Positions 37,051 through 64,000 of a DNA stretch of 64,000 bases are shown here, one piece after another. The notes under the pieces are model-generated. The model did no database searches. It was not told the origin of the DNA and saw only the letters and a list, made by a program, of their open reading frames with translations. A program made the position numbers and the translations under genes. Source of the stretch: Selaginella moellendorffii (Eukaryota; Plantae; Lycopodiophyta); assembly GCF_000143415.4 (NCBI RefSeq), contig NW_003314374.1:500561-564560 (forward strand), in the 5' to 3' direction. Each line of letters opens with the position of its first letter. The stretch's first letter is position 1.

Positions 37051-39347
37051 CAAATTTGGCATACATTAAAAAGTAGATATGCTAAATGAGCAAATCTAAA
37101 CACTTTTCAGAAATAGTATTTGGGATCAAAATAAGACTAACACAAATAATTTGATTCTCATTGGGCTATGTCACTCCTTGTTTTACGTCTGGCTTGGGTC
37201 TAAGCCCAAGCTCCACATTGCTCTAGTCGGTGGGGTACCTTCCTCCTTGCATTAATCCACCGGTATGCCAAAATCATGCCAAACACCATCTGACACCATT
37301 TTGCATGTAGGTGCTACATACAGGGAGCTGGTGCTTATGAGATTGTATTGGACCCTTGTTTCATAGCATAACAAGCTTGGAGTTTGGCTTCAAATTTAGG
37401 TGCATTACATTTGGTATTAAAGCAATTGTCTCAAAGATTCCTATCCAACTTTTATCAGTTTTTTGACTCAAGTTGCATACACAGAGACTTTTTTAGTAGA
37501 TCCAAAGAGATCTGTTTAGTATTAGTTGGATTGTACCATTTGGTAACAACATTGTATGCATGTTTAGTTACTGATAGAGGTATGTATGCAGCTAGTAGGA
37601 TGGTGAAAAGTAACTGTATTGATAGACGGACAAATCAAGAGGAAGAAACTCTTGAGGCTAAGTTAAAAGAGGAAGAGCCAAATATTGCAACATTGCAACG
37701 TACAACTCAAGAAGTTGAGATTGAGAATTTATGAAGGAAAGTTCATAAATTGAAAAAGGAAGAGAACAAGAAGTGGAAGAAAGAAATTGAGGCAACTAAA
37801 CCAACTAAACCTAAGCAACTGGACTCCTCTTCAAGTTTTGAGAATAATGAAGTTCCACAACCGCCCCTAGTTGCACGAGTTTTAAAGTTCAAGCCTCCAA
37901 AACCACCCAATTTCAGAGGCATGCAAGACTATCAGGTTTTGGAAGATTAGGTCTAAAATATGGAAAGCTATTTCATAACAATAGACATAAATGATTGTAC
38001 AAAAGTTGTGTGCATGCAATCCTTTTTCATTGATCATGCCAAAATTTGGTAGTGCTAAGTGTGTGCTAAAAAAGGGCAAACAAGAAGTTGGACCAAGATG
38101 CAGTCTCATATCTGTAAGGAATACTTCTTGGTTTGAGACTTTGCATGGAGCTGTAGTGGTTAAAGCAACGCAGACATAAGGAACCGAGCGNNNNNNNNNN
38201 NNNNNNNNNNNNNNNNNNNNNNNNNNNNNNNNNNNNNNNNNNNNNNNNNNNNNNNNNNNNNNNNNNNNNNNNNNNNNNNNNNNNNNNNNNAGAGTGTAAG
38301 GAGGCAGCACAACAAGTTGCCTTTAGTCACTCACTCATGGAACAATATCAGTAGCCGTATACTGGTACCTTAGACAAGAATAAAATTTTTGGGAATAAAT
38401 AAGGTGATCGGAAATAAAGGGTGGAAGGAAAGTTTCGCCCTAGAGGCTCATAAGCAATGGTTAACAAAGGTGGTGGTTAACAATTACTTGTAGCTTCTTT
38501 TGGTCCTAGGCCCTTTATTCCTCCTCCTGGTGGGTACAAGTAGTAGCAATCTGCAAAATCTGCTCCTAGCAGAATGGGTAGCGTGGGTTATTGCTTCTAT
38601 TGTGGAGAGTCAGGATATAGATTTTTGGAATGTCCCAACAAGCATAAAAGAAGGTCTCGTATTAATATAATGAGAGAAGACGGTGGTAGTGAAGTTGAAG
38701 GGGTTAACAAGTTGGTCAATGTAGACTATGAGGAAGAGGAGGTGAATTACTTTCATTACTTTCCTCAAGTTTTTCTCATAGTTAATGAAAATATCTGGTA
38801 GACTTTGTTTGCAAATATTGAATCTAGTTGTTAGGATTGAATGCTGAGAAAATGTCGCCTATACACTTCAGAAGGTGGAAGGTGTTTGCGGAAGGTGGGC
38901 AAGTAGCCAGAAAATTTGTGAGTGATGTTCAAATAAAAATATCCAAGTGGAAAGAAAGGGGATGGTCCAAAGTTGAGTTGAGCTCAATTCAGCTCAAGTC
39001 AATGTTAGTTAACATAGTCAACCATAAGTCTTATAAGGAAATATTAAGTCAGAAAAATGTTATTCTTTGGTGAACTTGAAATTTATGAATTTAAGTATCA
39101 ATGGCTCAGAGAAATTTTATTTTTTGAATCTTTCTAATGCAATTTATATAATAAAATACTGTTTCTAGAATTAGAAGTTCGTCTTTTTGGGCTTTATTGG
39201 TCCCAAATAAAATGGGAATATTAAAGTTTGAATGAACCTAAAATTTTTGTTATATATTTCAACATTTTAACATTTCAACAATTGACCAGAAATATATAAA
39301 TAATTCAAAACACTAATTCACTCATTCATTCTTTAGGGTTTATAGAG

Positions 39348-39569
39348 ATGGGAAGCAAGGAAGACAAAAAATTTGTAAGTAGTTCTAGCATATAGAAATG
39401 TGAGAATGTTAATTTTGTTTCACTACCACAATCTCTATATTACATGCCTGGTTTTTATTACCCATCCGGGAATATAAAGACCACTGTCACTATTGATAAA
39501 AATGCTCCTATTACTTCCAAAATAACAGTCTAGAGCAAGAGAAAAGAAGAAATGAACAGCACAACATAA
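39348..39569 (+). pseudogene. Possible small two-exon cargo gene
   Basis: TTAGGGTTT just upstream, ATG...TTT|GTAAGT donor, then a reading frame with one TAG. Acceptor not clear. Confidence 0.25.
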
Positions 39570-40039
39570 AGCACTAATAAATCCACTCTATAAACCTTTC
39601 AATGACTTTTATAATCCACTAAACTATTATAAAAAAAAAGTAAGTTTTTTATATATATCTTATTCCTTTTGATATGTTTTGTCTTTGCAAAGAGTACAAG
39701 TATATATGATGTGGACAAATCAAGAGTTAAATCTATATATGATTTTGGGATTGAAAGGTAATCTTGCAAAAAGGCATACTCACGTGCTTGTGTGTATTCG
39801 CTATTATTATATATGGCCAACTATATAAAATAAGGCTACGTATTAATTATGTGCTAGTTTTTAGCTTCTGAAACCCTATAGCCACTGGTCTGTCATAATA
39901 GGTTGTAATTACTGAGACTGATAATTATCATTCAATATAGTGTCATATCATAATAAAACATCATTCCCAAGATTGAAATATAGTATATTAATTAGAGAAT
40001 TCTTATTGTTGGGAAGTTTAATTTTTCTTATATCTTGCA

Positions 40040-40593
40040 ATGGTTAGGAAGAAGTTTACTTTTGGTCCTGAAAGCCTTTCATATGAATCTTTACCTCCAT
40101 CTTCAATTTCAACCAATAATCCACCTTCACCTTTATGCAATAATCCTCATTTTCATTTTGAGGGTTATTGTGAGGCTCTTCCATTTGTGACCTCGAGTGC
40201 AACTAAACAAGAATTTGTTCCTTATGATATTGTTAAAAGAGTTAGATTGCCTCCATGCTCCAAGAGCAATGTTAATATTTTCTTCAAGATCTTGCTCCAG
40301 ATATGGCAAGAGATCTTAATGTAAATATATATTATCTTCAGTGTTCTATATGCAACTTTTATTTAAACAAGACAGATAGTTGCATGGGTTTGGTAAATTT
40401 TATTGAGCATTGTCGTAAATGCTCAAGAGCGGGTTTGGAAGGTGTGCACACGTGGATGTATAAGAAAATCAAGAAAGAATTAAAAACACACAGCTATTAT
40501 GATTTCATGGTGAAGAACAATATTCCATTGGTGAACACTGCATCAGTAAGGGCTGAATATGGGATATTTAGGCCACCTTTTAATATAATGTGA
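40040..40593 (+). pseudogene. Cargo zinc-finger gene 1 (zf-XS-like), one frameshift
   Basis: CSIC...GLVNFIEHC...H...KKELKTHSYY. Confidence 0.6.
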
Positions 40594-40836
40594 AAGTCAT
40601 GCATAGTTTTTTGAAAAGTTTAATAAAGTGGAGAATCTTATATTTTCGAGAATGATAGTATTCTAGCATAAAGATATTATTATATATACAAGTGGTTTTG
40701 GTACTATTATAATTCTAAAGTCCCATTTTTGAGATTGACAATCTAAACTTTCAAGAACCCCTAGATCTTTTCTTAGTATAAATACTGATAAGGGATGCTT
40801 TCAACATTGGAATTTCAATTTGTTTACAGTGTAGGA

Positions 40837-41385
40837 ATGGCTAGGGAAAATGTTATTGCTACTCGCACTTGGCCCCCATGCATTTCATATGAGTTTCCAC
40901 CTCCATCTCCAACTTTTACCAACATTCCACCCTTCCCTCCACATAACAATCTTTGTGAGGCTTTTTCTTTTGTAGCCCCAAGTGTGACTAAACAAGAGAT
41001 CCCTTTTTCAGATAATGTTCTAGATGTTGTTACTAAAGATGAATTGTTTCATGTGCTTCAAGAATGATGCCAAATGTTTCTTCAAGATCTTGCTCCAGAT
41101 ATGGTTGAAACTTTTGAAAGAATGAACACATATTATCTCTAGTATCCCATCTACTACTTTTATTTAGATAAAACGGAAGGCAATATGGGTCTAGAAACTT
41201 TTTTAGAACACTGTCACAACTGCCCAAGAACTAGTGTGGAAGGTGTGCATAAATGGATGTATAAGAAAATCAAGAAAGAATTAAGAACACACAACCATTA
41301 TCATTTCATGGTGAGGAATAATATTCTGTTAGTAAATACTACATCTATAAGTGCTGAATATGGTATTTTTAAGCCATTCTACTGA
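40837..41385 (+). pseudogene. Cargo zinc-finger gene 2, tandem paralog of gene 1
   Basis: Shares CEA...TKQE, FFKILLQIW, GL..F.EHC, EGVH.WMYKKIKKEL.TH and AEYGIF.PF with 40040-40593. Confidence 0.65.
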
Positions 41386-43629
41386 AAGTTCTAGCTACTA
41401 ATAAATCTTACACTATAATATTATCCATCCCCCCCCCCTCTCTCACCTTTTTTTTATTAACAAAATTGTATTATCTATAGATAATAAACTCATAATACTA
41501 GTAATTATTAAATTTGACAGATTAACACTGTAACTCTGTCATCTCTGACACTGACACTGTCATTGTCACTATCTGCTGCACTGACACTATCACTGTCACA
41601 ATCATTATCACATTAACATGTGACATATCTTTCTCATTGCAAGTGGATGCATTCAATTGTCTTTTAATGTATTATTAATAAATAGATTTTTCATACCACT
41701 CCTCAATTTACACATTGTATATGATGTGCCATATATACCTAGAAAGACTTCTAGAAAACTAAATATATATTGTATATAAGTTTTTAAAACATTATAAATC
41801 ACTTCCTAGAAGCAATTGATAGAGAAGGACGAAAACCTCTAAGACGGCGTTTGAAGAACTTATATTCTTCAATCACAAACACCGATTTACTAAAGTCACG
41901 TGCTACCTTGACCATCGAACCACTACCTACTATGCAATCAATGACAACACCCCTAGTTGGGCAATAAAGCTCAAGTAGGACATGCATCACCAATGGAGAT
42001 TAGAACCGATACCCAGACAATGTGTTGTGGATATCGTTGTCTACGAGATTTAGTATGATGTTAGTAAAGCTATCATACCTTGGCAAAACCCTTGCAATGT
42101 GCTTGCTATCATGAAACCGTCATTTTCTCTTTTGCAGAACACATGGTAGGTCCACATCATAACCTGAATAATAAAACTTTAGAGATAACCGAAACAGAAG
42201 ATGATTTCTTAACTTCTCTAGCATGCCTAGGATGCCTTTGGTCTTGACCCCAACACTATCCATGATGCGCCCGAAAGAGAACCTCTTGAAGTTGACTCGA
42301 GTTGCATACCTCATAAGGCAGGACATCCAAAGGGGTCATTCGCGAGAATGAAAGCAACTTTACCAGTTGTGTGAAGGAGAATTGCTACCAAAAGGAATGC
42401 ATCCTTCAAGTGGTCTTTAGTTAGGATTTTCTAGCTTGGGACATCACCATTAGCATCTGAAAGACCATCTGGCATGTCAAAGAGCATAAAGTTTGTGCTC
42501 TTGAGTGCTCACTTATGGATCTTTTGACAAAAGTCCTCCCACTTTTTCCGGATAGCTATATTCTTAGCATCCTCCTCAAAAGATGCCATCAATGAATTGT
42601 AGGAGCCAATAAAGATCCCAACTTCACCATGGAATGCTACTGGAGAAACATGGTGAATCTAGGGGGAGAATACAAAGATAAAATGGAACTTACTTGGAAG
42701 AACATACTTTACTTCATACGGCTGTCATAAAAGCTATTGGATTCTTATACTATCTATTGGCATCTTGACAACCTCGTTGATGCCGAATAAGTGATGCTAA
42801 ATCATCACCATAGTGGCTACGAACTGCATTCTCGTTGAGATTGGCAAGAAACCAGATCTGCTCAATATCATGTACTAGGCTTTGTTTCTACACTGCAAAC
42901 TATCCCAACCTACAAAACACAAATTGTTAAATTGATTGAAGGAGAGGTACTCACGTATTAATTTTGTGGCAAGCTATCACAAGCCTTGCCATATCTAGAG
43001 ATCCTCTCACGTGTACATGTCCAACCGAAACATTGATGTGATAGACAGGATCGTCTCGGAAGCATTCATTGATGCACTTCATCCACGCACACCAACAATG
43101 ATTCCCGTTGATAATGTAGAACATTTTCCCCACAAATTGTTGAGTCTCAAGATGGCTTATAAGCATGATGTCAAATTCGCGGGACTTCATTTTCCAAATG
43201 TCATCCCAATCCCTCTCAATTTCTAGTGACATTGAAAAGGTATTTGTTGTTCCTGGCTTGAAGACCAAAACAAAGAACATACCTATGTTTGTCCTAAGGC
43301 CATTCTGTTTGTATAGACTATAGATGTCCATGTTAACGAAGTGAGGTGAAGCAAACCGAACAATGTTTGTCTGAGTGAATCGACATAAGGGGATTTCTCA
43401 AATCATGTCTCTTGGGCCTTCCCACTTGAGAGATCCAGAGTCGTGCGAATGGCCTTCTCTTTGGTTCTCAAAAATGTCTCTTGGAAGCGCTTGTTTACAA
43501 TGTGTTCAAGGAGCTTCACTTCTCTTTCAACTTCAACAACACCTCTAGTAGCACCATTATCAAATCTATCCCCCAACTCGGGCCCAACACCTCTTTCAGG
43601 CGCACTTGGGCATTGCTCCGTAATGTAGC

Positions 43630-43870
43630 AAGTTTTTGCCATATTTTGCGAATATGTTAAGAGTAGTGGCATTTGTGGTTGTGGCAGCAATGGTAGTGAT
43701 GATAATGATTGCAATGGCACTGGTGGTGGTGATGATGGTGGCGGTGGTGGTGGTAATAGCGATGATGGCGGCGGTGGTGGTAATGGTGGTGATGACGGTA
43801 GAGGTGGCAATGGTGGTGAAGATGGTGGCAGTGGTAATGGTGGTGGTGGCATTGATGGCGGTGGTGGGGG
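43630..43870. repeat. GGT/GGC/GAT trinucleotide low-complexity tract (poly-Pro on the minus strand)
   Basis: Directly visible; in frame with the methyltransferase-like gene. Confidence 0.85.
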
Positions 43871-44084
43871 TGCATATGGACTAGAGCTATTTGGTTGCGA
43901 AGACAGTAGAGTTGTCACTGTAGAAATCTATATCTAAATTTCAAATTGATTGTCATCTTGGATCTTATCTTCCTCATGTTTTGTTCTCTTTGATGCAACA
44001 TCCTTCTCCTTTTGTAGTTTCCGTTTAAAAAAAAAAAAAAAAATCATTATAAAATAAAACATGCATAAGAAGAGTAGGGACATA

Positions 44085-44825
44085 AGTGGCCGGTCTGTGC
44101 CAAGTGCCCGAGCTGGCCTACACGGAGTGCCCAGGCCGGGCACTTGGCGCGGGGGCTTGGTGCGGGCTCTGGTTTGCCGGCGTACCGGCCCACCCTCAAG
44201 CGTCGTGGCCGGCCTGTGCGAAGTGCCTGGCCCGGACACTTGGCGCAGGGGCTTGGCATGAGCGCCGGTTCGCCGGCGTACCAGATAACCCCCGAGCGCC
44301 GTGGGTGGCATGTGCCAAGTGCTTGGCCCAGGCACTTGGCGGGGGGAGATGGCATCGTTGCCGGTTCGCTGGTGTACCGGCCCGTGCCCAGCCTGGGCAC
44401 TTGGCACGGGGGATTTGGCACAGGCGCCAGTTCGCCGGCATACCGGATAGCCTCTGAGCTCCATGGCCGGCCTGTGCGGAGTGCCCGGCCTGGGCACTTG
44501 GCGGGGGGGCATAGCGTGGGTGCCAGTTCACCGGCGTACTGGCATGCCCCTGAGAGCCTTGGTTGGCCCGGGCACCTGGCAGCAGTGGCGCTGGGCACGG
44601 CAGCGGTAGTGCTGGGCATGGCAGCGGTGGCGCTGGGTGTGGTGGCACTAGGCGTGGTGTGGGAGTGGCGGTGCTTGGCGAGGCGTGGGCACGGTGGCTT
44701 TGGGCAGCGGCGGCACTGGGCATGGCGGCACTGGGCATGACAGCGCTGGGTCAGGCGTGGGCATGGCGGCACTGGGCAGCGGCGGTGCTGGGCGTGGCGG
44801 CGCTGGGCGTGGTGTGGGAGTGGAG
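44085..44825. repeat. CpG-rich island: ~96-bp tandem repeats followed by 15-bp repeats
   Basis: CACTTGGC at 44141, 44237, 44333, 44398, 44495 and a variant at 44573; GGCGGCACTGGGCAT-type units at 44580-44825. Confidence 0.9.
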
Positions 44826-45715
44826 GAGATAAAACTTACTCTTGGTGGCATTCTATTCAACGCCGATGGATCTTATAGTCACTCCCAATCTCCCGCTCTA
44901 CTTTCTGTAAAACTCTAATGCTAGCAGCTGCCCTAACCCTAACCTAACTTTCATCATAGCCGTTCATCATGGATGCAGTAAATCTTTATTACATTCTGCA
45001 AATATGTGCTAGCAATGTACAATTTCTATTCCATCCTAGATTTGATCACATGACAAAGTCCTTTTGAGTTGTAATTTAATAATCGAGGCATGCTTTAATA
45101 CGACTATGCCATAATGTGGAAATAATGTCATAGACGCATGCATTGAATTGATCATAGTACGAAATTATAAATGAGAATTATGTGTTTCTTGCAAGTCATA
45201 GAATCTTGTCAGAAATTATAAGATTATTAAATCGTAAGGTGTTATTTCCAAAGCAATGTATATATATAATTTGCTATAGGTGATAGATGGTAGTACAAAG
45301 ATGGAATATATTTAAATGAGTTCAGAAGAATATGATGATTTCTGGCTTTAATGAAGTATCAAAAATATGTACAATATTTAATTTGTTTAGCAACAATTGG
45401 TTGATGTTAGATCCTAGAATAAAATCATTCCTATCTTTCATATTATGGCACATATTTGAAGTGATATTTCTTTTCGTTCTACCAATAGTTTGTCCATATA
45501 ATAACTTTGAGGATGTTTTTGAATTCAATGTATACAGACTTTTAATATTGTACAACATAGTCCTTTATACTTTATACAGAATTTATTATAACAACATTAT
45601 TTGATGTTAGATCCTAGAATAAATTCACCCTTTCTTTTCATATAATGGCATAGCACATGTTTGAAGTGACATTTCTTTATAAAAGTTCAAAGTTCCAAAA
45701 CCTAAAGGCAATAAA

Positions 45716-47334
45716 ATGAAGAGTTCCTTTTGCATTACCAAGATCACCCACCGCTTTTTTTCTCCCAAAGTCTTATTTTAGAAAGTTTTCTTTGCCAACA
45801 TTTTGATCTTTCTCTTAGTTCTATTTCATTGGAAGTTATGATTCACAACAATATTGGTGTTGTTGAACGATCAGAATTTCTTCTTTCGGGTATAGGTGAA
45901 GGTGGACCACATTGGGATTTGCAACATTCTAAATCGAAGAAGATTCAAGTTTTTGGATCTCCAATCAAAGTGCGAGGTTGCAATCCTACCAAAGTGAATG
46001 TGAAGCAAGAGTCGATCGTCATCATTTCTTCCTCTTCTAGTTCTAGTGCAGTGTGAGCCAAGAATTTCCAAACTCCAACTTCACCGATATTCAAAGATGT
46101 TTGCAATGTTTTCCAGTTTTCCTGCCTCTCTATCGACGTGCATTCCTTTCTACATAGGCCCATTAGCAAGCTCCCATCTACATACAATGGCAATATCTTC
46201 TTTGAACTACCACCCTTGTCAACTCAAAAGGAAAGGGGATGGAGACCAAGCAAGACGTCTACAATTAGTGCAAGATCAAGACCACACATTTCCAGCATTT
46301 CGAAGGCACAGTGTCCATGGTTCATTGTGGTAGGTATTTAGATTGTGTGAATAAAACATGCAATTGAGAGTGTGGTGAAAACTCCATATTTTTTTAAGGA
46401 TCTGCAACCAATTCTCCCATTTGTAACACCATTGGTGTTTGATTCAAGTTTCAGTTTTGCAAGAATGCTCCATTGTGTCGTGCCATCTGCGGGGCTAAGA
46501 TGTACTATTTTCTTGCATGGGATGGAGAGGCTAGTAGAGCTACAGTACATATTGGCACACACACACACATCCAATGCAGGAAGGGATACAAAGGAGTTCA
46601 ATCAATTGTTTCAAAGATGTAGTGTAAATAGAGACTATGAGAAACTCATATACAACTCCGAAGCATGTTCAAAAGATAGTGCTCAAGGATTTTATTGCAA
46701 GCACTTTACTTGATCCAGACTGCAAGAATACTCAACTGGATGAGGCTAGCTTGCGGGAGTATACGACTGTCCGGCTAGTATCACAAATCCCCAAAGTCAC
46801 TTCTTNNNNNNNNNNNNNNNNNNNNNNNNNNNNNNNNNNNNNNNNNNNNNNNNNNNNNNNNNNNNNNNNNNNNNNNNNNNNNNNNNNNNNNNNNNNNNNN
46901 NNNNNNNNNNNNNNNNNNNNNNNNNNNNNNNNNNNNNNNNNNNNNNNNNNNNNNNNNNNNNNNNNNNNNNNNNNNNNNNNNNNNNNNNNNNNNNNNNNNN
47001 NNNNNNNNNNNNNNNNNNNNNNNNNNNNNNNNNNNNNNNNNNNNNNNNNNNNNNNNNNNNNNNNNNNNNNNNNNNNNNNNNNNNNNNNNNNNNNNNNNNN
47101 NNNNNNNNNNNNNNNNNNNNNNNNNNNNNNNNNNNNNNNNNNNNNNNNNNNNNNNNNNNNNNNNNNNNNNNNNNNNNNNNNNNNNNNNNNNNNNNNNNNN
47201 NNNNNNNNNNNNNNNNNNNNNNNNNNNNNNNNNNNNNNNNNNNNNNNNNNNNNNNNNNNNNNNNNNNNNNNNNNNNNNNNNNNNNNNNNNNNNNNNNNNN
47301 NNNNNNNNNNNNNNNNNNNNNNNNNNNNNNNNNN

Positions 47335-47397
<63 letters not shown>

Positions 47398-49554
47398 AGG
47401 ATAAAGTCTTGGATATGTGAATCTTGAGAGGGGAAACTTCAATAAAAAATCAACTCAATCCTTGAACTAAAACAGACTTGTCCCTACGAATTTATCCATG
47501 GGAGTTTATTTCTAGATCAAGTCATTAGTGAGCAAGAGCACTTGTTCGTCTTCAAAATGTCTACCATGGGCCCCCACCTCTGGTGTGGATTTTATTTCCC
47601 TAATGGATATGTCTGGGTCAAGTGACCTTGTTAATGCATGGGTATATTTTGACCATATGGAGTGGGTGGCAGGTTGGACAACCATGGGAGCTTATGTGTA
47701 TGATCTGAGATAGTTTTTTTTCTCATTATCTTAAAATGGTTTTAAGCATTGCCCTTTTCATAGGCTATATTGTAACATGACAATTGCAACAGCAGAGTTT
47801 AAAATACAAAACCAAATGGCTCAAGAAATCTTTTGGAAGTCCCTCTCCAACATTGTATTGAAGTGGACTGGTAAGCCTACCAACTTTCACAATTTCATAG
47901 CAGATGGGGTTAAGGCTAATTGGAATGGTGTTCGGGTAGTCTTTGGGAATGGTTAACCCCTAGAAGGTTGTGAGAGGACTTGTGAGATCCATTGGGCTCA
48001 AACCCTAAACCAACATTGCCACCTTATCAAGCCAGATTTCCAATTAGCATTTAAGAAGTTGTGTAAACAATGGCAGACTGCACCTTCTAAAGAAGAGCAT
48101 GAGGCAAAAGCAAACAAAATCTGAATGTGGTGGCGTGAAGATGGCCATATTGACGTAAGTTGTCTACCACAACTTGAGTCATGGTTGGGAAGTTAAGATG
48201 TTCCAATGAGGACATCACTCTTTTCAGGTTGGTTTTTCTTTTTTTCCTCTCTTTTTATTGCTTTTTAATATCATCTTTTATAAGGATCAACCACTTGAGG
48301 ATCTTGCATACACCCCAACTGTGAATCTCTCAGAGAGTAAGCATTGGATCTAGTGTTCCTCTGAGGCAGGGAAAGGGAAAATGAGTCTATATGAAGCATT
48401 TCTATTAGATTTGATATGCACTATAGAGCAGTCTTCAAAAGCCTTGGCATTTGAGGAAGGAAGATACATGGGAATAGGACCTTCGGTTGAAATGTTACAT
48501 GATCAAATGAAGAAGAAAGTGACTCCACCAGCACAAACAGTGGCAACTGCAGTGGAGGAAGTGGTCCATGGCACATCTATAGAGTTCTCTCCCCGGGCTT
48601 CTATTGGTGACATGAAGACTGTCCACTCAAAGTGTCGCTTTTCCTTTGTTGGTGAAGATGTTGGCACGAATCTTGGAGTAAAAAGCTCTCACAGGCCTGA
48701 TGTTGAGTACCATTCTGCTCCAAGACATTGCCCCCAAACTGAGCCACCTCAAGTGGCTGATGAAAAAAGTGCATCACAACAGTTGAAATTGTTTATCGTA
48801 GCGTGGAGCCAAAGTAATAGGCAATCCATCAAGTGCCAATAAAATCAAATGTAAGGTGTGTGGGGATGCTTTCAAGGGGCAAGTGTTGGGCTTGGATCCA
48901 TGGTGACAAGTCTGCTTCTGTTCCAGCCCATGGTTTCCATGGGGAATGAAAGCAAGCAGGATTTTCAAGATGGTGTTGGCTATATTGCTGCAACACTGAT
49001 GTCAACCATACAAAGCGGCTTGAAGACACTATAGTGACTAAACCTTATGCAATACCTAAAGAATGGCTGGTTGCAATTATGCAATCCCGGATGAGATTGA
49101 AAACCTTGAGAAATTTGGTTTCAATCTTGAAATGAGAGTTAAAGACACGAGTGATAAAACCAGGATTGTTCCTGCGGAGATGCACAGGAGGCTAGCAAAA
49201 AAAGGAAAGGCAATTAAATTTATTGGCATCATCTCTAAACAGAAGCAAGGTAAAATAAACTTAGCTCAAACATTTGACTGTGAAATTCTCTCCACGAAGT
49301 ACATCACTATGCTTGCAAAAGAGTACATAGTCAAAACAAAAGGTGGAGAGTACACAATTGCCATTCAAGACTTTCCTTTTTACACATATCTAGACTTTAT
49401 GAAGTGCGAGGAACATGGGAAGGCATATGTTCCTTGCAAGCATATATACTACATCTTCATCAATATCTTGCATTAGGATCCTAAAGTGGATATTCATATA
49501 CACCAAGTAAACTTTACTATTGCCAAGTTGTAGAAAATTTTTAGAGCTAATTAG
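45716..49554 (+). pseudogene. Mutator-like transposase of copy 1, decayed (contains assembly gap 46805-47334)
   Basis: Colinear with 60484-63822 (reverse complement); many stops and frameshifts. Confidence 0.9.
47335..47394. repeat. (TA)n microsatellite abutting an assembly gap
   Basis: About 30 AT units directly visible. Confidence 0.95.
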
Positions 49555-49654
49555 ATTTTCCAACACTATTGATGTTTATTCTCTATCAATAATATAAACT
49601 TATTATACCTTATATAATTAATAAAAATATTTTATTATTTCACTTTTCATTTCA

Positions 49655-49805
49655 TATTCTTGCGAGTGTTCTTTTTTGCAATACTACCCATAGTATTTGT
49701 GAGTCTCTATTTTTGTCTTTACCATCTCAAAAAATATTTCATGGTAGTCTTTTGAGTGCGTGATGTTGCAATGTGTTGCGAGAGTATATGTACCATTATA
49801 GTTGT
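49655..49805 (-). pseudogene. 3' remnant of cargo zinc-finger gene 3 in copy 1
   Basis: Reverse complement matches 60238-60392; about 450 bp present in copy 2 (about 59787-60236) is missing here. Confidence 0.8.
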
Positions 49806-52800
49806 TTTTTTTTCCTTTAAAATGGTTATATGGCCTTATATAGAATCTTAATTCAAATTTAATAATTTTAAAATTCTGACAAACTTGACATTTACTAGAT
49901 AGAAAGTATAAAGTACAAATTTAAAGAAGTGACAAGAATACTCTTTTTGCAAATATTTTATTTTATGTTCTAACAAACGTCCCTATCATTGCATGTAGTA
50001 AATATTTAAATTATTAGAACAAGAAGTGTCCTTTAGAACATTTCTACTATATAATATATAAAGAGTTATGAAATTATTAGGTTATAATGTTTTACTAAAT
50101 TACAATTGAAAATTGAGCTCAACTCTTTAGCTCGTGAGCTCAAGTATGGTACACGCTTGAAAGAAAGAGTGGACTTAGTAGTGTTGAAGATACTAGATTT
50201 TCAGATGGTGTTTGGTATGGATTTCTTCAACAAATATATTAAAGGGATTTATGGTGCTAGACAAAATCATATCACATTAAGGTTAGAAGGACATCTTAAT
50301 ATGTCAGTTCAGTTGCAAAAGCATTCCTCGAAAGGATTGGGATGCTAAGTTTGTAATTGTGAGAGCCGCTCAAAAAGTAGCTAAGAAGGGATGTTAAACC
50401 TTTTGGGTTCAAGTGATGGAAGCTGAGAGTGTTAGTGACTTAGTTCAAATAAATGATAGGGTTGATCCTATACTAAAAAAAATATTAGAGTTGTTAGCGA
50501 GGAATCAGGATATTTTTCTGAAGGACTTGCCACTAAGGCTACCTCTTAGCTGTGAGGTTGATCATTGGATTGAGGTCATTTCGGGTTCTAAATCACCTAC
50601 ATAAGCTCTATATTGTTTGAACATCAAGGAAATGGTTGAACTCAAGAAGCAACTCATTAAGCTTCTTGACAAAAGTCATATCTGACCAAGCAAGTTACAT
50701 ATGGAGCATTAGTCCTTTTTATTATGAAAAAGGGTGGAATCATAAGGATGTGTATTGACTATCGGGCACTTAACAAGATCATAGTCAAAAATAGTTATCC
50801 TTTGCCTCACATTGATGACTTGTTTAACCAACTCTTAAAGACTAAGTATTTTACATGACTTGATTTGCAGTCTAGATGTCATCAAATATGGGTGGCAGAT
50901 TAAGATGTATAGAAAATAGCTTTTAAGACTCAATATGAATCTTATGAGTTCCTCGTTATGCCATTTGGGCTATGCAATGCTTCAACAACGTTCAACACTA
51001 TGATGGATAGAATATTTAGAGATTATTTAAACATATTTGTTGTCCTATATATCAACAATGTTTTAGTCGTTAATGAAACATTGGAGGATCATTTGAAAGA
51101 CTTGGAACTGGTGTTTTAGAAGTTGCGTAAACACAAATTATATACTAAGGAAAGTAAATGCACTTTTGGACAATTGCGTATGAACTTTCTTGGATATATA
51201 GTTGATAGTGGCATAATTGAGGTGGATCCAAAGAAGGTGGAAGGGGTGAAGTCTTAGGAAGTCCTAACCACTATATCAAATGTTCGTTCCTTTCTTGGTT
51301 TGGCAAGATACTATTGCAAGTTTGTCCACAATTTTGCAAGAATTACTCTTTTGTTGACCGAGTTAACAAAGAGTAGTATACCATTTCATTGGACACCGGC
51401 TTGTCAACATGCTTTTATGTGGTTGAAAGAAATCTTGATTATGGTTCCTATTTTCAAAATCCCAAATCTTGATAAACCCTTTGAAATGCATTGTGATGAT
51501 GTTGCAACAAGATTGTAACAAAGTGGTTGGTGTTATGCTAAAGTAACATGGTTGTCCTATTGCATTCTATTCCAAGAAATTGGATGAAACTCAACGGAGA
51601 TAGCCAACACACGAGAAAGAAATGTTTGTTATAGTGTCGGCATTGGAACATTGATGACATTATTTGGGTGGACATACCAAGGTTTATACAGATAGTAACA
51701 CACTTAGCTATTTTGCTACGTAGCCTAAGCAGGCTTGTTGGCAAGAGAAGCTTGCCAGATTTGATATTGAAATCATATATAAACCTAGTAAAGACAATAT
51801 TGTTCCGAATTCATTGAGTTATCAAGCTCAGTTCCAAGCAATATTGGCAATTAGTTTAGGCTGGTTGGAGGATGTTTGGGCTTTATATAGAAGTGATCCA
51901 TTAGCAAAGGCAATCTTGCTCTGTGCGAAGTTGTCAAAGTAGAACCCTAGTAGCGAAGCGGCAAAAGTTACTAGTAATGCCAATGCAAAGCTTCACTTCT
52001 TAGTTGAGGATGGGCTTATATTCTATAAGCTAGAAAGATTGTATCTTCCCTCTAAGGAACTGTAGCATCTGTTTCTGCAGGAACATCATGATGTTCCAGC
52101 AACAAGACATAGTGGAAAGCAAAGGACTCTTGTTTCATTAAATTGGGATTTATTCTTGTCTTGTATGGAAGATGATATAGCGGACTATATCTATTTTTGC
52201 CCTATATTATAGGTCATGAGAATTTGTAATGAGGTGAACCTATGTGAAGTTGTTTGTAGGAGGAAGTTGGTTGAGTCTTGAAAATGGCCATGCTGGTGCT
52301 GAAAAGCATTACAACTTCCTAGCCTGCTTCTCAGTTTTGCACTTACATTGCTAGCATAGAGTGTGACACTTGATTTTGTCACTTGTTTGCTGAAGTCTAA
52401 GGGTTATGATACTTTGATGGTGGTTGTGGATCGGTTGTTGAAGATTGCATACCTCATTCCAACTATAGAAATAATGAATGCGAAACAAGTAGCAAAACTC
52501 TTTTTCCATGAAGTTTTGGGGCATATTATTCCAATTGTTTGGTACTAACTTGAAGTTTAGTATGGCTTATCATCCTCAAACTGATGGGTAAACCGAATGT
52601 GTGGATGCTCAAGTTGAGGATTATTTACAGTACTATGTTGCGGTAGACTAACGTGATTGGGTTGAGCATTTGGATACAGTAAAAATCTGTTATAACAACA
52701 TATTTCACAATGTTATTGGTTGTTCTTCATAGGAGATGTTGCAAGGGAATGCTTGTGGGGTTCCTCAATAGATTGTTATACTTAAACTAATGTTTGAAGT

Positions 52801-57674: not shown

Positions 57675-59388
57675 TGTTAGGCACCAGCTTTGACTACGTG
57701 GTCAACGTCAGTCAAAGGGAGGCTCAAGGGTATATTAAGGCATGTTAGGGTAAGGGACTTAACTACCCTAAGGCTCACAGTGGAGCTTTTGAGGTAGCTC
57801 GGGGGTGGTTGGGTAGTGAGGAACCTCAAGAGGTGGCATAGCATAGTTTAGGGTGACTAGATTTCTGTCTTTTTGCGCCGGATCATAACATTGGTATCAG
57901 AGGGAGGTTGGTTGCGATGGCCGACCAAGTTGAACGCTGGAATCCTATTGTCGATGGTGGTGCCAACGATGGTGCTGACGAAGCTACGGAGATTTGGACC
58001 ATTCAAGATGTGGTTCATGAGCTGTGAGCCCTTAATCAAAATCAACAAGAGATGCAAGACGAGATGCATGGCATGATGGATAGAGGCGTGTTGAGGCACT
58101 CGAGGCTAAACGGGGTAGCACTCCAAGTAAGCCTTCTTTGGTAGATCAATTCAAGATTCCAACTTTTTCCGGTGATGGTGGTGTGGACGAGTGTCTCGCT
58201 TGGCTAGCCAATGTGAAGAAGTTCTTGGCTGCTAGAGGAACTCCAAATGCAAAGGCTTTAGTGGCTATTCCGATGGTTTTGCGTGATGCGGGTGGGTATC
58301 CAATCACACCCATCCATATCGCCCCCCTCTAGTCGCCCCGAATAACCCTATACGGATGTTGGGGTGGTGGAATTGGCTTGAGGAGTCCTGTGTTGTGGAT
58401 AAGAAACCACCAGTGTCTACCATGGATGAGTTTGAGGCTGCTTTCCGTTTATGTTTTGCCCCTCATTACGATGTGGAGAATGCTTGTACGGAACTTCGAC
58501 ATTTTCAGCAAGGGAAAATGATGCTCGGGGACTATATTGAGAAGCTTACTCGCTTGATCAGTCGTGTTCCAACAAAGGATCCAGATCAGAACAAGTCCTA
58601 CTTCATTAATGGCCTACATAGTGAGAGCATGCGGCAACATTTGCGTCATTCTCAACCTACAAAGAGTTTGGAGGAGCTCTTTGATACAGCTCGTCAACTT
58701 GACAATGACAAGCACAAGTCTCGCAAGCATTCGTGGAGTCCTTCTGTCGAGAATTGTCGTGATGATCGCCGTGGACACAAGGATGGGAACAAGCATCACA
58801 AGTTGAAGTTGGTGGTGACTACTTCAGATGCAAAGGGGTCTAAGAAGTAGAAGTTCTTTGTGAAGAATTATAGACAGGGTTGTCATCATTGCGGCGAACT
58901 TGGACACTACAAGGCTGATTGTCCACAGTTGAAGGACAAATAGCAGGACAAGAAGAATGGCCAATCTTCTTCTCACGGTAAGTCAGATACTAAAAAGTTG
59001 CAAACTTTGTAGTATGAGGATGAGGAGAACGACCATTCCGGTCAGAGGAAGCGACTTTCGATCGTTGCTCGTCAGCTCAACTGTGTGTGGAACAAGATGG
59101 AGCTCAAGGATACGCGTGAATCAGCTTTAATGCTGGAGGGCATGTTCCGTGGCAATCCAGTGCCGATTTTACTAGATAGTGGGAGCAATGACAACTTTGT
59201 TTCGGCAAAGTTTGTTGCGGAGCATGGCCTGGTCATATATGGCATTCTTCCATACACAGTGGAAGGTGTAGCTACCTCTACTCAGCATTTCGATGTTTGT
59301 GTTGAGGGGCTAGAAGTGTTGGTTGGCAAAACCACACTTGTGGAGACTTTTTATCTCGGGATATCCATTGTGTGGATCTCATTCTTGG
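57675..59388 (+). mobile_element. Ty3/gypsy element C: short LTR, PBS, gag, protease; interrupted by Mutator-like copy 2
   Basis: TGTTA...TAACA 57675-57890; PBS TGGTATCAGAG at 57892; CHHCGELGHYKADC; LLDSGS; ends at VDLILG. Confidence 0.88.
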
Positions 59389-59930
59389 GGGCGCGGACCA
59401 TACTTGAGCTCACGAGTTGAAGAGTTGAGCTCACGAGTTGAGCTCAATTTTCAATTGTAATTTAGTACAAACATTATAAATTTTAAAATTTTAAGGTTAT
59501 GGCGAACCTAATAATTTAATAACTCTCTATATATTATATAGATAAAAATGTTCTAAAGAACACATTTTGTTCTAATAATTTAAATATTTACTACATGCAA
59601 TGATAGGGACATTTGTTAGAACATAAAATAAAATGTTTGAAAAAAGAGTATTCTTGTCACTTCTTTAAATTTGTACTCTATGCTTTCTGGCTAGTAAATG
59701 TTAGGTTTGTCAGAATTAAAAAATTATTAAATTTGAAATAAGATTCTATGGGAAACCATATAACCGTTTGAAAGGAAAAAAAATAACCGTTGATGTAAGC
59801 TTATTGCATATAAAAGAAAGACTTGGTTCTTTGTAGAATACATTCTTGAGGGGTTTGTCGTAGCATACTGTCTAGAATTTATAGATCTTCATTCACACTC
59901 TCATTCGAAAAAAGGGAAATACACCCACAA

Positions 59931-60392
59931 ATGTCTATGGGTTCTAGTGTTGGTAATTTTAACTCTCACAATCTTTCTTCCCAGGGCTCAAGGGCTAGGA
60001 GATGCAATAACTATCCCATTGCACAACATAACCAAATCACACAAGAGAATGAAAGAGAGGATAGAGAGGATAGTGAGGATAGTGATCATGAGTTGGAAAT
60101 AAATGCAATGACAGAGGGTGCAACAAATTGGGTGAAAAAGAATGCCCTCTTACTTGTTTTAGAAAAGTGCAATTCTGCCACTTTCAAGAAGTGCCCCATA
60201 TGTTTTCAAGCGTCTGGTGGAAACAATGGCAATGATCAGTATGATGGTATATATGCTCTTGCGACACACTGCAACATCACGCACCCGAAAGACTACCATG
60301 AAATCTTTTTTGAGATGGTAAAGACAGAAATGGAGACACACGAGTACTATGGGCAGTATTGCGAGAAGAACACTCGGAAGCATATAAAATGA
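59931..60392 (+). CDS. Cargo zinc-finger gene 3 (zf-XS-like), intact ORF convergent with the transposase
   Basis: 153-aa open frame with CPIC...DQYDGIYALATHC...H...KTEMETHEYY. Confidence 0.7.
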   Translation: MSMGSSVGNFNSHNLSSQGSRARRCNNYPIAQHNQITQENEREDREDSEDSDHELEINAMTEGATNWVKKNALLLVLEKCNSATFKKCPICFQASGGNNGNDQYDGIYALATHCNITHPKDYHEIFFEMVKTEMETHEYYGQYCEKNTRKHIK

Positions 60393-60483
60393 AAAGTGAA
60401 ATGAAAAAGCACATTTGTATTAATTATATAAAGTATAATAAGTTTTATTGATAGAGAATAAACATCGATAGTGTTGGAGAAAT

Positions 60484-63400
60484 CTAATTAGCTCCAAAAG
60501 TTTTCTGCAACTCAGCAATAGTAAGGCTTGCTTGGTGTATATGAATATCCACTTTAGGATCCTGGTGCAAGATGTTGATGAAGATGTAGTACATATGCTT
60601 GCAAGGAGCATATGCCTTCCCATGTTCCTCGCGCTTCGTAAAGTCTGGACATGTGCAAGAAGGAAAGTCGTGAATGGCAATTGTGTACTCTCCACCTTCT
60701 GTTTTGACTATGTACTCCTTTGCAAGCGCAGTGATGTACTTCGTAGAGAGAATCTCACACTCAAGTGTTTGAGCCAAGTTTATTTTACCTTGCTTCTGCT
60801 TGGAGACGGTACCAATAAATTTAACTGCTTTACCTTTTCGTGCTGGCCTCCTGTGCATCTCTGTAGGAATAGTCCTGCTCCTGTCACTCATGTCTCCAAC
60901 TCTCCTCTCAAGATTAAAACCAGATTTCTCAAGGTTTTCAATCTCATCCGAGGTGAGCGCGACCCCATTAACAACTGGCCATTCTTTAGGTACTGCATCA
61001 GGTTTAGTCACTATAGTGTCTTCAAGCCGCTTCGTATGGTTGGCGTCGGTGTTGCAACAATATAGCCAGCACCATCTTGAAAATCCTGCTTGCTTTCGTT
61101 CCCCATAGAAACATGGGGCTGGAACAGAAGCAGATTTTTCACCACGAATCCAGGCCCAACACTTGCCCCTTGGAAGCATCCCCACACACCTTACATTTGA
61201 TTTTGCTGGCACACGTCGGATTGCCCATTGCTTCGGCTCCACGTTACGGTAAGCAATTTCAACCTGTTGCGATGCACTCTCTTCATCAGCCACTTGAGGT
61301 GGCTCAGTCCGAGAGCGGTGTCTTGGAGCAGAATGGTACTCGACATCAGGCCTGTGGGAGCTTTTTGCTCCAAGGTCCGTACCAACATCTTCCCCAGCAA
61401 AGGAAAAACGACGCTTTGAGCGGACAGTCTTCATATCACCAATAGAAGCTCGGGGAGTGTACTCCATAGATGTGCCACGGACCACTTCCTCAACTGCAGT
61501 TGCCACTGTTCGGGCGGGTGGAGTTAATTTTCTCTTCATCCTATCATGTAACATCTCAACAGAAGGCCCTGTTCCCATGTATCTTCCTTCCTCGAATGCC
61601 AGTGCTTTTGAAGATTGCTCTATAGCACATATCAAATCTGATAGACAGGCTTCGTATAGACTCATCTTCCCTTTCCCTGCCTCAGAGGAACGCCAACTCC
61701 AATGCTTACTTTCGGAGAGATTCACAGTTGGGGTGTATGCGAGGTCCTCAAGTGGTTGATCCTAATGGAAAAGGCAATATTAAAAGGTAATAAAAGGAGA
61801 AGAAAAAATATAAACCAACCTGAAAAGAGTGATGTCCCCATTGGAACATCCTAACTTCCCACCATCCTAACCATGACTCAAGTTGTGGTAGGCAACTTAC
61901 GTCTGTATGGCCATCTTCACGCCACCACATTCGGATCTCGTTTGCTTTTGCCTCATGCTCTTCTTCAGAAGGTGCAACTTGCCATTGTTTGCACAACTCC
62001 TTAAATATTGATTGAAACTCTGGCTTGATAAGGTGGCAATGCTGGTTTAGGCTTTGAGCCCAATGGAACTCACAAGTCCTCTCACGACCTTCCAATGGTT
62101 GACCATTCCCAAAAACTGCTCGGATACCATTCCAGTTTGCACCAACCCCATCTGCCATGAAACCACGAAAGTTTGCAGGCTTACCAGTCCGCTTTAGGAC
62201 AATATCAGAGAGGGACTTCCAAAATATTTCCTGTGCTGTCTGGTCTTGTACTTTAAACTCTGCTGTCGCAATTGTTAAGTTACAACGTAACCTATGAAAA
62301 CATAAATATTATAACAATTTCAATATAATGAGAATAAAAATTACCTTGGATCATACACATGAGCTCCCATGGTTGTCCAACCGGATACACGCTCCATATG
62401 GTCAAAATGTACCCATGCATTTGCAAGGTCACTGGACCCAAACATGTCCATTCGGGAGACAAGATCTACGCCAGAGGCAGGGCCCATGGTAGACATTTTG
62501 AAGACGAAGGGGCGCTCTTGCTCATTCACAACTTGGTCTAGAAACAAACTTCCNNNNNNNNNNNNNNNNNNNNNNNNNNNNNNNNNNNNNNNNNNNNNNN
62601 NNNNNNNNNNNNNNNNNNNNNNNNNNNNNNNNNNNNNNNNNNNNNNNNNNNNNNNNNNNNNNNNNNNNNNNNNNNNNNNNNNNNNNNNNNNNNNNNNNNN
62701 NNNNNNNNNNNNNNNNNNNNNNNNNNNNNNNNNNNNNNNNNNNCGTAGTAAGTCCCACAAGCTAGCCTCATTTAGTTGAGTCTTTTGGCAACCTGGATTG
62801 AGTAAGGTATTTGCAATAAAATCCTTGAGGACGGTCTTCTGAATATGCTTCAGAGTTGTAGATGAGTTTCTCATAGTCTCTTCCTGTACAGCATCTTTGA
62901 AATGGTTGAGAGAACTCCTTTGTATCCCTTCCTGCATTGGATGCATATGTGTGCCAACATGCACTGCAGCTCTTCCAGCCACTCCATCCCGTGGAAGAAA
63001 GTAGTACATCTTGGCCTCGCAGATAGCACGACATAGAGGAGCATTTTTGCAGAATCGACATTTGAATCCAACAGCAATGGTGTCACAGGCTGGAGGATTG
63101 ACTGCAGACCCTTCGAAAAATATAGAGTTTCTAGAGCGGTCTCGATTGCATGCTTCATCCACACAATCTAAATGCCCGCCACAATGAACTATAGACACTG
63201 TGCCTTCAAAATGTTGAAAGTGTGTGGTCTTGATCTTGCACCAATTGTGGACATCCTACTTGGTTTCCATCCCCTTCCGTTTGGAACCTGTGCTGCTGAC
63301 AAGAGGTGGTAGCTCGAAGAAAATGTTGCCGTTGTAGGAGGATGGAAGCTCACTCACAAGCCTATACAAAAACAAGTGCACGTCGATTGAGAGGCGTGAA

Positions 63401-63822: not shown

Positions 63823-64000
63823 CCTTCTCAATAGGTTTTGGAGTTCTCTCTCTTTATGCTACTTGTAAAAATCTATAGTGAAACATAATTGAAATTTAAA
63901 TAGAGTAATAAGAAGACAACGTACAAAATGAATTTAAATTCTATAGCAAATTTAACATGTGTAAGTGTGACAGTATTAATATTACTGTCATCTATTATGA

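What the first reader, a model, noticed from the sequence alone, without database searches (positions are those of the whole stretch)
59931..60392. Stand-alone SGS3/zf-XS-like zinc-finger protein encoded by the transposon
Seen: intact ORF with CPICFQASGGNNGNDQYDGIYALATHCNITHPKDYHEIFFEMVKTEM. From memory this parallels the SGS3 finger pattern CPAC..GPGAIDWY.GL.PL..HA.......H..LAE.L..EL. Established: zf-XS occurs in the RNA-silencing proteins SGS3 and IDN2/FDM. Inference: a finger without the XS RNA-binding domain could act as a decoy suppressor of silencing.
Basis: partly seen in the sequence, partly recalled or inferred. Interest (0 to 1): 0.72.

Follow-up and report, generated by a model that had tools for sequence, protein, structure and literature searches.

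The report
Orphan zinc-finger gene of a transposon
A small intact gene for a Cys/His-rich (zinc-finger-like) protein really sits just inside one end of a large cut-and-paste transposon, but no test links it to the plant silencing protein SGS3, so it is best read as a lineage-restricted helper gene of unknown job.

Summary
An intact 153-codon ORF lies at 59931-60392 (+) and carries the quoted peptide. It sits about 540 bp inside the terminus of a Mutator-like element (copy B) and converges on that element's SWIM-finger transposase ORF.

The SGS3/zf-XS reading is not supported:
- Pfam scans of the whole ORF, the isolated finger and its paralogs give no zf-XS hit, even at E<=10.
- A word search and an exhaustive phmmer of 1.84 billion representatives give no true relative; the three hits are repeat-protein artefacts.
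- PDB and ESM-Atlas searches give only sub-threshold leads to generic C2H2 fingers.
- Both AlphaFold models are too poor to use (pLDDT 45 and 54).

Evidence that this is a real transposon gene:
- Two remote paralogs lie in the other arm of the second in-window copy (copy A, 38959-50158, 9-bp target-site duplication). They share the skeleton CxxC..G..HC..[CH]..H..K..THxY (hhalign E 7e-4).
- Differences between copies fall mostly on third codon positions.

Copy A has lost the ORF's first two thirds by a 456-bp deletion, and its remnant carries a stop.

The scan has already found this gene family on other pieces of the same genome (reportedly Selaginella), with the same verdict. Function is unknown. 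The best guess is a nucleic-acid-binding helper placed like mudrB or VANC.

The parts
59931..60392 (+). Intact 153-aa ORF (17.5 kDa, pI 5.7): polar/acidic N-terminal part (residues 1-60), predicted helix, Cys/His module, C-terminal helix
   Evidence: secondary structure from low-confidence models
60192..60350 (+). Cys/His core, C88-x2-C91 ... G106 ... H113-C114 ... H118 ... H123 ... K131 ... T136-H137-x2-Y140. These are the columns kept in the paralogs
   Evidence: alignments; hhalign
60051..60085 (+). 9-bp tandem repeat x3 that codes the acidic stretch EREDREDSEDSD
59809..59816 (+). TATAAAAG, a TATA-box-like motif 115 nt upstream of the ATG, with no ATG in between (inferred promoter element)
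   Evidence: read from the sequence; open frame
60457..60462 (+). AATAAA 65 nt after the ORF stop (inferred poly(A) signal). The converging SWIM ORF has its own AATAAA at 60449-60444 on the - strand, so the 3' ends would overlap
   Evidence: read from the sequence
59389..59447 (+). Terminus of element copy B with three TTGAGCTCA motifs. The homologous end of copy A is at 50158-50105
59784..60239 (+). 456-bp segment (TATA motif, start codon, acidic region, CPIC) that is absent from copy A. Read as a deletion in A, because the left-arm paralog has CxxC and HC in one continuous ORF
49672..49806 (-). Remnant of the same ORF in copy A (equivalent to residues 102-146): 76% aa identity, in-frame TAG, later frameshift
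40303..40593 (+). Remote paralog u1 in the left arm of copy A (96 aa, open): CSIC..G..HCRKC..H..K..THSYY
41122..41385 (+). Tandem duplicate u2 of u1, degenerate (stop; both Cys of CxxC changed to Tyr)
60484..61725 (-). C-terminal transposase ORF of copy B with the SWIM signature CxCx15CxH. It converges on the finger ORF, with the stops 91 bp apart
38959..50158 (+). Copy A of the element, 11,200 bp, flanked by a perfect 9-bp target-site duplication GAAAGAAAG (38950-38958 and 50159-50167)

Best explanation
The ORF is a real accessory gene, or a recently real one, of an 11-kb Mutator-like DNA transposon, and it is restricted to this lineage. It encodes a 17.5-kDa protein with a disordered acidic N-terminus, one zinc-binding Cys/His module and a conserved C-terminal helix ending in THxYY. 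It belongs to a small orphan family. Other members lie in the opposite arm of the element, and both arms read inward from the termini. It is not detectably a member of the zf-XS family. By position it corresponds to mudrB of maize MuDR: it lies between one terminal repeat and the 3' end of the transposase gene and is transcribed convergently. Most likely (inference) it binds nucleic acid, either the element's own subterminal DNA or its RNA, and so helps the element's transposition or expression. Shown here: the ORF, its place in the element, the paralogs and their shared skeleton, the lack of any outside relative, and a coding-type substitution pattern. Inferred: zinc binding, expression, nucleic-acid binding and any role in the element's life cycle.
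For: The ORF is intact and longer than chance predicts. It lies inside the repeat unit shared by two copies, about 540 bp from a terminus marked by TTGAGCTCA motifs that occur only at element ends. The element has a 9-bp TSD, imperfect TIRs and a SWIM-signature ORF. Profile-profile alignment of ORF plus remnant against the left-arm paralogs gives E 7.4e-4 over 57 columns and aligns CxxC, G, HC, H and THxYY (alignments). At one ligand position H118 is replaced by Cys in the paralogs, as expected for a metal ligand. Differences fall by codon position 9/1/12 (ORF tail vs remnant) and 17/13/29 (u1 vs u2). There are fewer amino-acid changes than in resampling that preserves the substitution types (P 0.03-0.13 and 0.02-0.03), while the two wrong frames give P>0.6. 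Nei-Gojobori dN/dS is 0.16-0.17, though this is inflated in significance by transition bias. No homologue appears in any host proteome, which argues against a captured host gene. A TATA-like motif and AATAAA flank the ORF. Earlier follow-ups on other pieces of the same genome reached the same reading; these are AI notes, not independent proof.
Against: Only one intact copy could be examined. In the other copy the ORF is deleted and stopped, and the left-arm paralogs are themselves truncated or broken. Intactness over the roughly 7% divergence of this lineage is not unlikely by chance (own estimate, about 0.2). The selection signal is modest and rests on 45 and 85 codons. The ESM-Atlas 'recognition' value of 2153 is below the level that 91% of known-family proteins reach. 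The AlphaFold models have low confidence (pLDDT 44.6 and 54.2). No domain or relative gives any handle on function.
Confidence: 0.55

Rival explanations
1. A highly diverged stand-alone zf-XS finger, derived from an SGS3/IDN2-type host gene, that competes with SGS3/IDN2 partners and weakens silencing of the element.
For: There is a skeleton likeness: CPxC, then 18-21 residues ending in aliphatic-x2-H, then 9-12 residues to an invariant His, followed by an amphipathic helix. H123 is invariant in all four family members. zf-XS is described as a C2H2-type finger, and SGS3-family proteins may carry only some of the family's domains (PMC3378875). Mutator-like elements are known to encode anti-silencing proteins (VANC; PMC5735166, PMC10398659).
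Against: There is no PF03470 hit at E<=10 for the ORF, its finger segment, the remnant or the paralogs. Exhaustive phmmer and word searches find no SGS3-like protein. Language-model neighbours are generic C2H2 families, none of them zf-XS, and all score under 0.9. The invariant Cys next to the first His, and the His/Cys exchange 3-4 residues later, point to a different ligand set.
Confidence: 0.08
2. A relic or chance ORF with no present function: either an open frame that survives by luck in a decaying transposon copy, or an accessory gene that is now dead in every copy.
For: Copy A has lost it. The left-arm paralogs are broken or truncated. Copy B's transposase is split into several ORFs and crossed by an assembly gap. 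No expression data are available. Atlas recognition and model confidence are both low. A 153-codon ORF is expected about 0.2 times per 64 kb at this composition (scaled).
Against: Paralogs keep the Cys/His skeleton although no DNA similarity is left between the two arms. Differences between copies avoid second codon positions in the ORF tail and favour third positions in u1/u2, in the correct frame only. The ORF has a first-ATG start, a TATA-like motif and a poly(A) signal. Earlier notes report the ORF at the same place in other copies and under selection (unchecked here).
Confidence: 0.27
3. A fragment of a host gene captured by the element, as in Pack-MULE cargo.
For: Mutator-like elements often capture host gene fragments (established knowledge). 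The 456-bp segment carrying the ORF's 5' part is present in one copy and absent in the other.
Against: No protein in 1.84 billion representatives, or in the word-indexed collection, resembles it. The reading frame runs smoothly across the indel boundary. The paralog u1 has both halves in one ORF, so the indel is a deletion in copy A rather than a capture in copy B.
Confidence: 0.05

Closest known systems
zf-XS domain (Pfam PF03470) of SGS3, IDN2 and FDM proteins
   Same: A single short Cys/His module starting with CPxC, a long spacer to a His that follows an aliphatic residue, and a further His followed by a helix. It occurs in plants.
   Different: There is no profile or sequence match. There is no XS, coiled-coil or XH domain in the protein or beside it. 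The family's invariant 'HC' and the His/Cys position 3-4 residues later suggest Cys-containing second-half ligands. It is transposon-borne and has no host orthologue.
mudrB (MURB) of maize MuDR (own knowledge of the element's structure)
   Same: A small second gene of a Mutator-superfamily element, placed between one terminal repeat and the 3' end of the transposase gene and transcribed convergently with it. It is lineage-restricted and has no recognisable domain.
   Different: No sequence relation was detected. MURB is not a Cys/His finger protein. Here further paralogs sit in the other arm, and the element also carries other cargo (a ParB-like/methyltransferase-like gene, noted by other findings).
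VANC (and VANB) of Arabidopsis VANDAL Mutator-like elements (PMC5735166, PMC10398659)
   Same: Accessory proteins encoded by a Mutator-like element beside the transposase.
   Different: No Pfam hit to the VANB or VANC domain families appeared in any scan. The size and architecture differ. No functional data exist for this ORF.
Generic C2H2-type fingers (zf-C2H2_2, zf-met, zf-C2H2_jaz, zf-Di19, DUF629)
   Same: These are the nearest named clusters by protein-language-model features for residues 76-153. The pattern CxxC ... H-x4-H can be read in the ORF.
   Different: All scores are 0.83-0.87, below the 0.9 lead threshold. There are no hmmscan hits. The Cys-to-His spacer is 21 residues rather than about 12. 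The second His is a Cys in the paralogs.

Membership tests
zf-XS (PF03470; SGS3/IDN2/FDM) | Match to the family profile | tested here: not met
   hmmscan against Pfam-A at E<=10 gives no PF03470 row. This holds for the whole ORF, finger segments of 55 and 74 aa, the u1 finger and the copy-A remnant, and u1/u2. Caveat: HMMER's filters drop most matches above E of about 0.1.
zf-XS (PF03470; SGS3/IDN2/FDM) | Sequence relatives among SGS3-like proteins | tested here: not met
   Word search is blank. Exhaustive phmmer of 1.84e9 representatives gives only three tandem-repeat surface proteins, which match residues 60-111 without any Cys/His correspondence.
zf-XS (PF03470; SGS3/IDN2/FDM) | C2H2 ligand pattern (PMC3378875 calls zf-XS a C2H2-type finger) | tested here: inconclusive
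   C88, C91, H113 and H118 or H123 could form a C2H2 site. However, C114 is invariant and H118 is Cys in the paralogs, so CxxC + Cxx(x)[C/H] fits equally well.
zf-XS (PF03470; SGS3/IDN2/FDM) | Adjacent XS RNA-binding domain, coiled coil or XH domain | tested here: not met
The protein has 153 aa and no other Pfam domain. Its neighbours are the element terminus and the transposase ORF.
zf-XS (PF03470; SGS3/IDN2/FDM) | Fold like a zf-XS finger | not testable with these tools
   The models have pLDDT 44.6 and 54.2 and are too poor for a fold search. To my knowledge no solved zf-XS structure exists to compare with.
Classical C2H2 zinc finger (PF00096 and relatives) | Profile match and C-x2-4-C-x12-H-x3-5-H spacing | tested here: not met
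   There is no hmmscan hit. The spacer is 21 residues in the ORF and 18 in u1. Only sub-threshold language-model leads appear.
Mutator-like element (for the carrier) | 9-11 bp target-site duplication | tested here: met
   A perfect 9-bp GAAAGAAAG flanks copy A at 38950-38958 and 50159-50167. Copy B's far end lies outside the window.
Mutator-like element (for the carrier) | Terminal inverted repeats | tested here: met
   The termini are imperfect and share GAGTTGAGCTCAATT..TCAA..TTAGT..AACAT. TTGAGCTCA is found only at the three termini, 9 hits against 0.9 expected.
Mutator-like element (for the carrier) | MULE transposase domain and SWIM finger | tested here: inconclusive
   SWIM scores E 0.014 and 15.4 bits against a cut-off of 19.6, with the CxCx15CxH signature visible. 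No MULE-domain hit appears in the ORF pieces scanned. The core is crossed by assembly gaps at 62554-62743 and 46806-47334.
MuDR mudrB / VANDAL VANB-VANC accessory genes | Sequence homology to those proteins | tested here: not met
   No Pfam family of those proteins appears in any scan, and phmmer finds no relatives. Only the position and orientation in the element are alike.

The most novel reading that the evidence does not exclude
The inward-facing finger mini-genes in both arms are sequence-specific binders of the element's own terminal or subterminal DNA or RNA. Together with the ParB-like/methyltransferase-like cargo gene, they protect the element from host silencing or regulate its expression. 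That would be a lycophyte counterpart, by function and not by descent, of the VANC anti-silencing system, built on an orphan zinc-finger fold.
Probability: 0.12. Interest if true: 0.7.

Novelty: new variant of a known kind. Interest (0 to 1): 0.3.

Why it matters
Few plant DNA transposons are known to carry genes beyond the transposase, and those studied (mudrB, VANB/VANC) show that such genes can control insertion or defeat host silencing. This is an orphan zinc-finger family carried in both arms of a high-copy Mutator-like element of an early-diverging vascular plant. It is a candidate for another such helper, and testing it is straightforward. As it stands, though, it is an unannotated gene of unknown function. 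The scan has already met it several times in this genome, and the attractive link to SGS3 does not survive testing.

Tried and rejected
1. Pfam scans for zf-XS on the whole ORF, finger-only segments, the remnant and the paralogs gave nothing.
2. The word-indexed protein search with the ORF and with u1 was blank.
3. Exhaustive phmmer gave three hits (P0002-P0004). I rejected them as artefacts of tandem-repeat proteins whose repeats each weakly match residues 60-111.
4. PDB phmmer and profile searches gave no significant hit. The best was the UTY/KDM6 zinc-binding segment CSIC..HCHDC at E 0.33, which I use only as a hint about the ligand pattern.
5. ESM-Atlas feature searches returned no family at 0.9 or above.
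6. Two AlphaFold runs, on the full ORF and on residues 76-153, each with the 4-row alignment, gave pLDDT 44.6 and 54.2. I did not send these models to fold search, because low-confidence models give meaningless matches.
7. Several routes to more copies gave nothing. The look-up of encoding contigs for the ORF and for u1 found neither on record. The transposase ORF gave one soil-metagenome protein at 25% identity on a 2-kb contig. The search for related loci and an exact DNA pattern in metagenome contigs were blank. The search of earlier findings by sequence and by relatives was blank.
9. A sensitive blastn between the two arms of the element found no DNA similarity, so the paralogy is visible at protein level only.
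10. A short 'NLNIYYMQ' match upstream of the ORF to the start of u1 was judged chance (E 7.5, not collinear).

Full report
**Observation.**
- The ATG is the first in its open frame, which opens at 59850.
- The protein would be 17.5 kDa with pI 5.7, Cys at 25, 80, 88, 91, 114 and 144, and His at 13, 33, 53, 113, 118, 123, 137 and 151.
- In first-order Markov resamples of the local 13.6 kb, an ATG-ORF this long appears 0.04 times per region. Length alone is therefore suggestive but not decisive.
- A TATAAAAG motif lies at 59809-59816 with no ATG between it and the start. An AATAAA lies at 60457-60462, 65 nt after the stop. Both are consensus matches, not evidence of use.

**Setting.** The window holds two inverted copies of one large repeat.
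- Copy B: 59378-59783, 60240-62553 and 62753-63842 match copy A at 50169-49806, 49800-47500 and 46758-45694, with 77-86% identity.
- Copy A is bounded by a perfect 9-bp target-site duplication, GAAAGAAAG, at 38950-38958 and 50159-50167.
- Its ends are imperfect inverted repeats. The motif TTGAGCTCA occurs nine times in the window, only at the three element termini, against 0.9 expected.
- A 413-aa ORF on the - strand (60484..61725) ends with a CxCx15CxH SWIM signature. Pfam SWIM scores E 0.014, below the gathering score.
- No MULE-domain hit was obtained from the other transposase pieces, which are crossed by assembly gaps.
- The 9-bp TSD, the TIRs and the SWIM signature make 'Mutator-like' a fair label, with the transposase domain itself unconfirmed.
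- Copy B's terminus lies at about 59389, inside a Ty3-type gag/protease fragment.
- The finger ORF therefore starts about 540 bp inside the terminus and reads inward. It converges on the SWIM ORF, with the two stop codons 91 bp apart. This is the position and orientation of mudrB in maize MuDR (my knowledge of that element).

**Conservation between copies.**
- Copy A lacks 59784-60239, which holds the TATA motif, the start codon, the acidic stretch and CPIC. Its remnant (49806-49672, - strand) is 76% identical in protein and carries CAG>TAG and a frameshift.
- Twelve of the 22 nucleotide differences are G>A in copy A, the mark of deamination decay.
- The 456-bp indel is best read as a deletion in A, for two reasons. 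The frame runs across its boundary, and a paralog (below) has both halves in one ORF.
- The 22 differences fall 9/1/12 on codon positions 1/2/3.
- Resampling that keeps the substitution types gives P(simulated amino-acid changes <= observed) of 0.03-0.13. The two wrong frames give 0.66 and 0.93.

**Paralogs.**
- The left arm of copy A holds two tandem units on the + strand.
- u1 (40303..40593, 96 aa, open) reads CSIC..G..HCRKC..H..K..THSYY.
- u2 (41122-41385) is 64% identical to u1 but has a stop, and both Cys of CxxC have become Tyr.
- No DNA similarity remains between the arms.
- BLASTP links the ORF and u1 over only 18 residues (E 0.001 for the single comparison).
- A profile of ORF plus remnant aligns to a profile of u1 plus u2 over 57 columns with E 7.4e-4. 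It pairs CxxC, G106, H113-C114, H123, K131, T136-H137 and Y140.
- H118 of the ORF is Cys in u1 and u2, an exchange typical of a metal ligand.
- u1 and u2 differ 17/13/29 by codon position, with resampling P of 0.02-0.03 and P>0.78 in the other frames.
- Simple Nei-Gojobori dN/dS is 0.16-0.17 for both pairs. The strong transition bias makes that figure look better than it is.
- Together these results say the family was protein-coding and constrained for part of its history. They do not show that the copy-B ORF is functional today.

**Test of the SGS3/zf-XS reading.**
- Pfam-A (24,736 models, zf-XS among them) gives no zf-XS row at E<=10. This holds for the whole ORF, 55- and 74-residue finger segments, the u1 finger and the remnant, and u1 and u2. 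The only rows are noise (DUF6044, PHD_ash2p_like, zf-FLZ and others, all far under their cut-offs).
- The word-indexed search found nothing.
- Exhaustive phmmer against 1.84 billion representatives returned three proteins. All are long tandem-repeat surface proteins whose repeats each weakly match residues 60-111, with no Cys/His correspondence, so I reject them.
- PDB searches by sequence and by profile gave nothing significant.
- The best non-significant profile hit was the UTY/KDM6 zinc-binding segment (CSIC, about 20 residues, HCHDC). It suggests that the invariant C114 and the H118/Cys position may be ligands. That would give a CxxC + Cxx(x)[C/H] site, not the C2H2 site described for zf-XS (PMC3378875).
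- ESM-Atlas features gave no neighbour at 0.9 or above. For residues 76-153 the nearest named clusters are generic C2H2-type families (zf-C2H2_2, DUF629, zf-C2H2, zf-met, zf-Di19, zf-C2H2_jaz) at 0.83-0.87, and none is zf-XS.
- Two AlphaFold runs gave pLDDT 44.6 and 54.2. I did not use them for fold searches.
That is a lead from memory, not a test.

**Search for more copies and for expression.**
- The ORF and u1 are not on record as called genes.
- The SWIM ORF has one 25%-identical relative on a 2-kb soil contig.
- Two metagenome scans were blank.

**What the scan noted before.** Earlier notes (AI notes, used as leads) say the genome is Selaginella moellendorffii. They also say the same kind of finger mini-genes has been followed up on other pieces:
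- three related mini-genes near both ends of a 12.7-kb transposon (s1-348968);
- one in an 11.7-kb transposon (s1-405349);
- a right-arm ORF at the same place in three decaying copies (s1-353473);
- a tandem pair under selection in a high-copy repeat (s1-374911).

Each follow-up found no link to SGS3. My in-window results agree on every point I could test: the two-arm arrangement, the right-arm position, the weak selection signal and the lack of zf-XS kinship. I did not verify the species.

**Interpretation.**
- The most likely reading (0.55) is an orphan, lineage-restricted accessory gene of a Mutator-like element, encoding a small zinc-binding protein.
- Its acidic, repeat-coded N-terminus (9-bp repeat x3 at 60051-60085), its single finger and its mudrB-like position suggest a nucleic-acid-binding helper of transposition or of the element's expression. 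That mechanistic step is inference only.
- Rivals are a relic or chance ORF without present function (0.27), a truly diverged zf-XS decoy (0.08) and a captured host fragment (0.05). The last is disfavoured by the complete lack of host homologues.
- VANC of Arabidopsis VANDAL elements (PMC5735166, PMC10398659) shows that Mutator-like elements can encode anti-silencing proteins.

**Verdict.** It is a new variant of a known kind (a DNA-transposon accessory gene), and the scan has already seen it elsewhere in this genome. Interest is modest.

Noticed in passing
window 38950-38958 and 50159-50167: A perfect 9-bp target-site duplication GAAAGAAAG flanks element copy A, fixing it at 38959-50158 (11,200 bp). 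This TSD length is typical of the Mutator superfamily.
   Followed up: yes
window 38978-38987, 50113-50143, 59404-59447: The near-palindromic motif TTGAGCTCA occurs nine times in 64 kb, only at the three element termini (0.9 expected). It is a likely transposase-binding or other protein-binding site.
   Followed up: partly
window 40040-41385 (+): There is a tandem duplication in the left arm of copy A. Each unit has a Pro-rich ORF (40040-40324; 40795-41067) followed by a finger ORF. In unit 2 both parts lie in one frame broken by two stops, so the ancestral gene may have been about 190 aa. In unit 1 they are in different frames, through a frameshift or an intron.
   Followed up: partly
window 58138-59380 (+): A Ty3-type gag (Retrotrans_gag, E 1.3e-10) plus an aspartic-protease fragment ends where element copy B begins. 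The DNA transposon appears to have inserted into the retrotransposon.
   Followed up: partly
window 60390-60486: The finger ORF and the SWIM ORF converge, with stops 91 bp apart. Each has an AATAAA inside the spacer (60457-60462 on +, 60449-60444 on -). Their transcripts would overlap by tens of bases and could form dsRNA.
   Followed up: no
window 49672-49806 vs 60234-60368: Twelve of the 22 differences between the ORF tail and the copy-A remnant are G>A in copy A. This is a deamination-type bias that fits long methylation and decay of copy A.
   Followed up: partly
window 60051-60085: The acidic stretch EREDREDSEDSD of the ORF is coded by three 9-bp tandem repeats, so this part of the protein probably grew by slippage.
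   Followed up: no
L001 (soil metagenome contig, 2034 bp), gene 319-1812: The only database relative of the 413-aa SWIM ORF is a 497-aa protein (P0001, 25% identity, 98% coverage, no Pfam domain) on a short soil-metagenome contig.
   Followed up: no
window 46806-47334 and 62554-62743: Runs of N (assembly gaps) fall at the same homologous place in the transposase region of both copies, next to an (AT)n tract in copy A. This hides the putative catalytic core.
   Followed up: no
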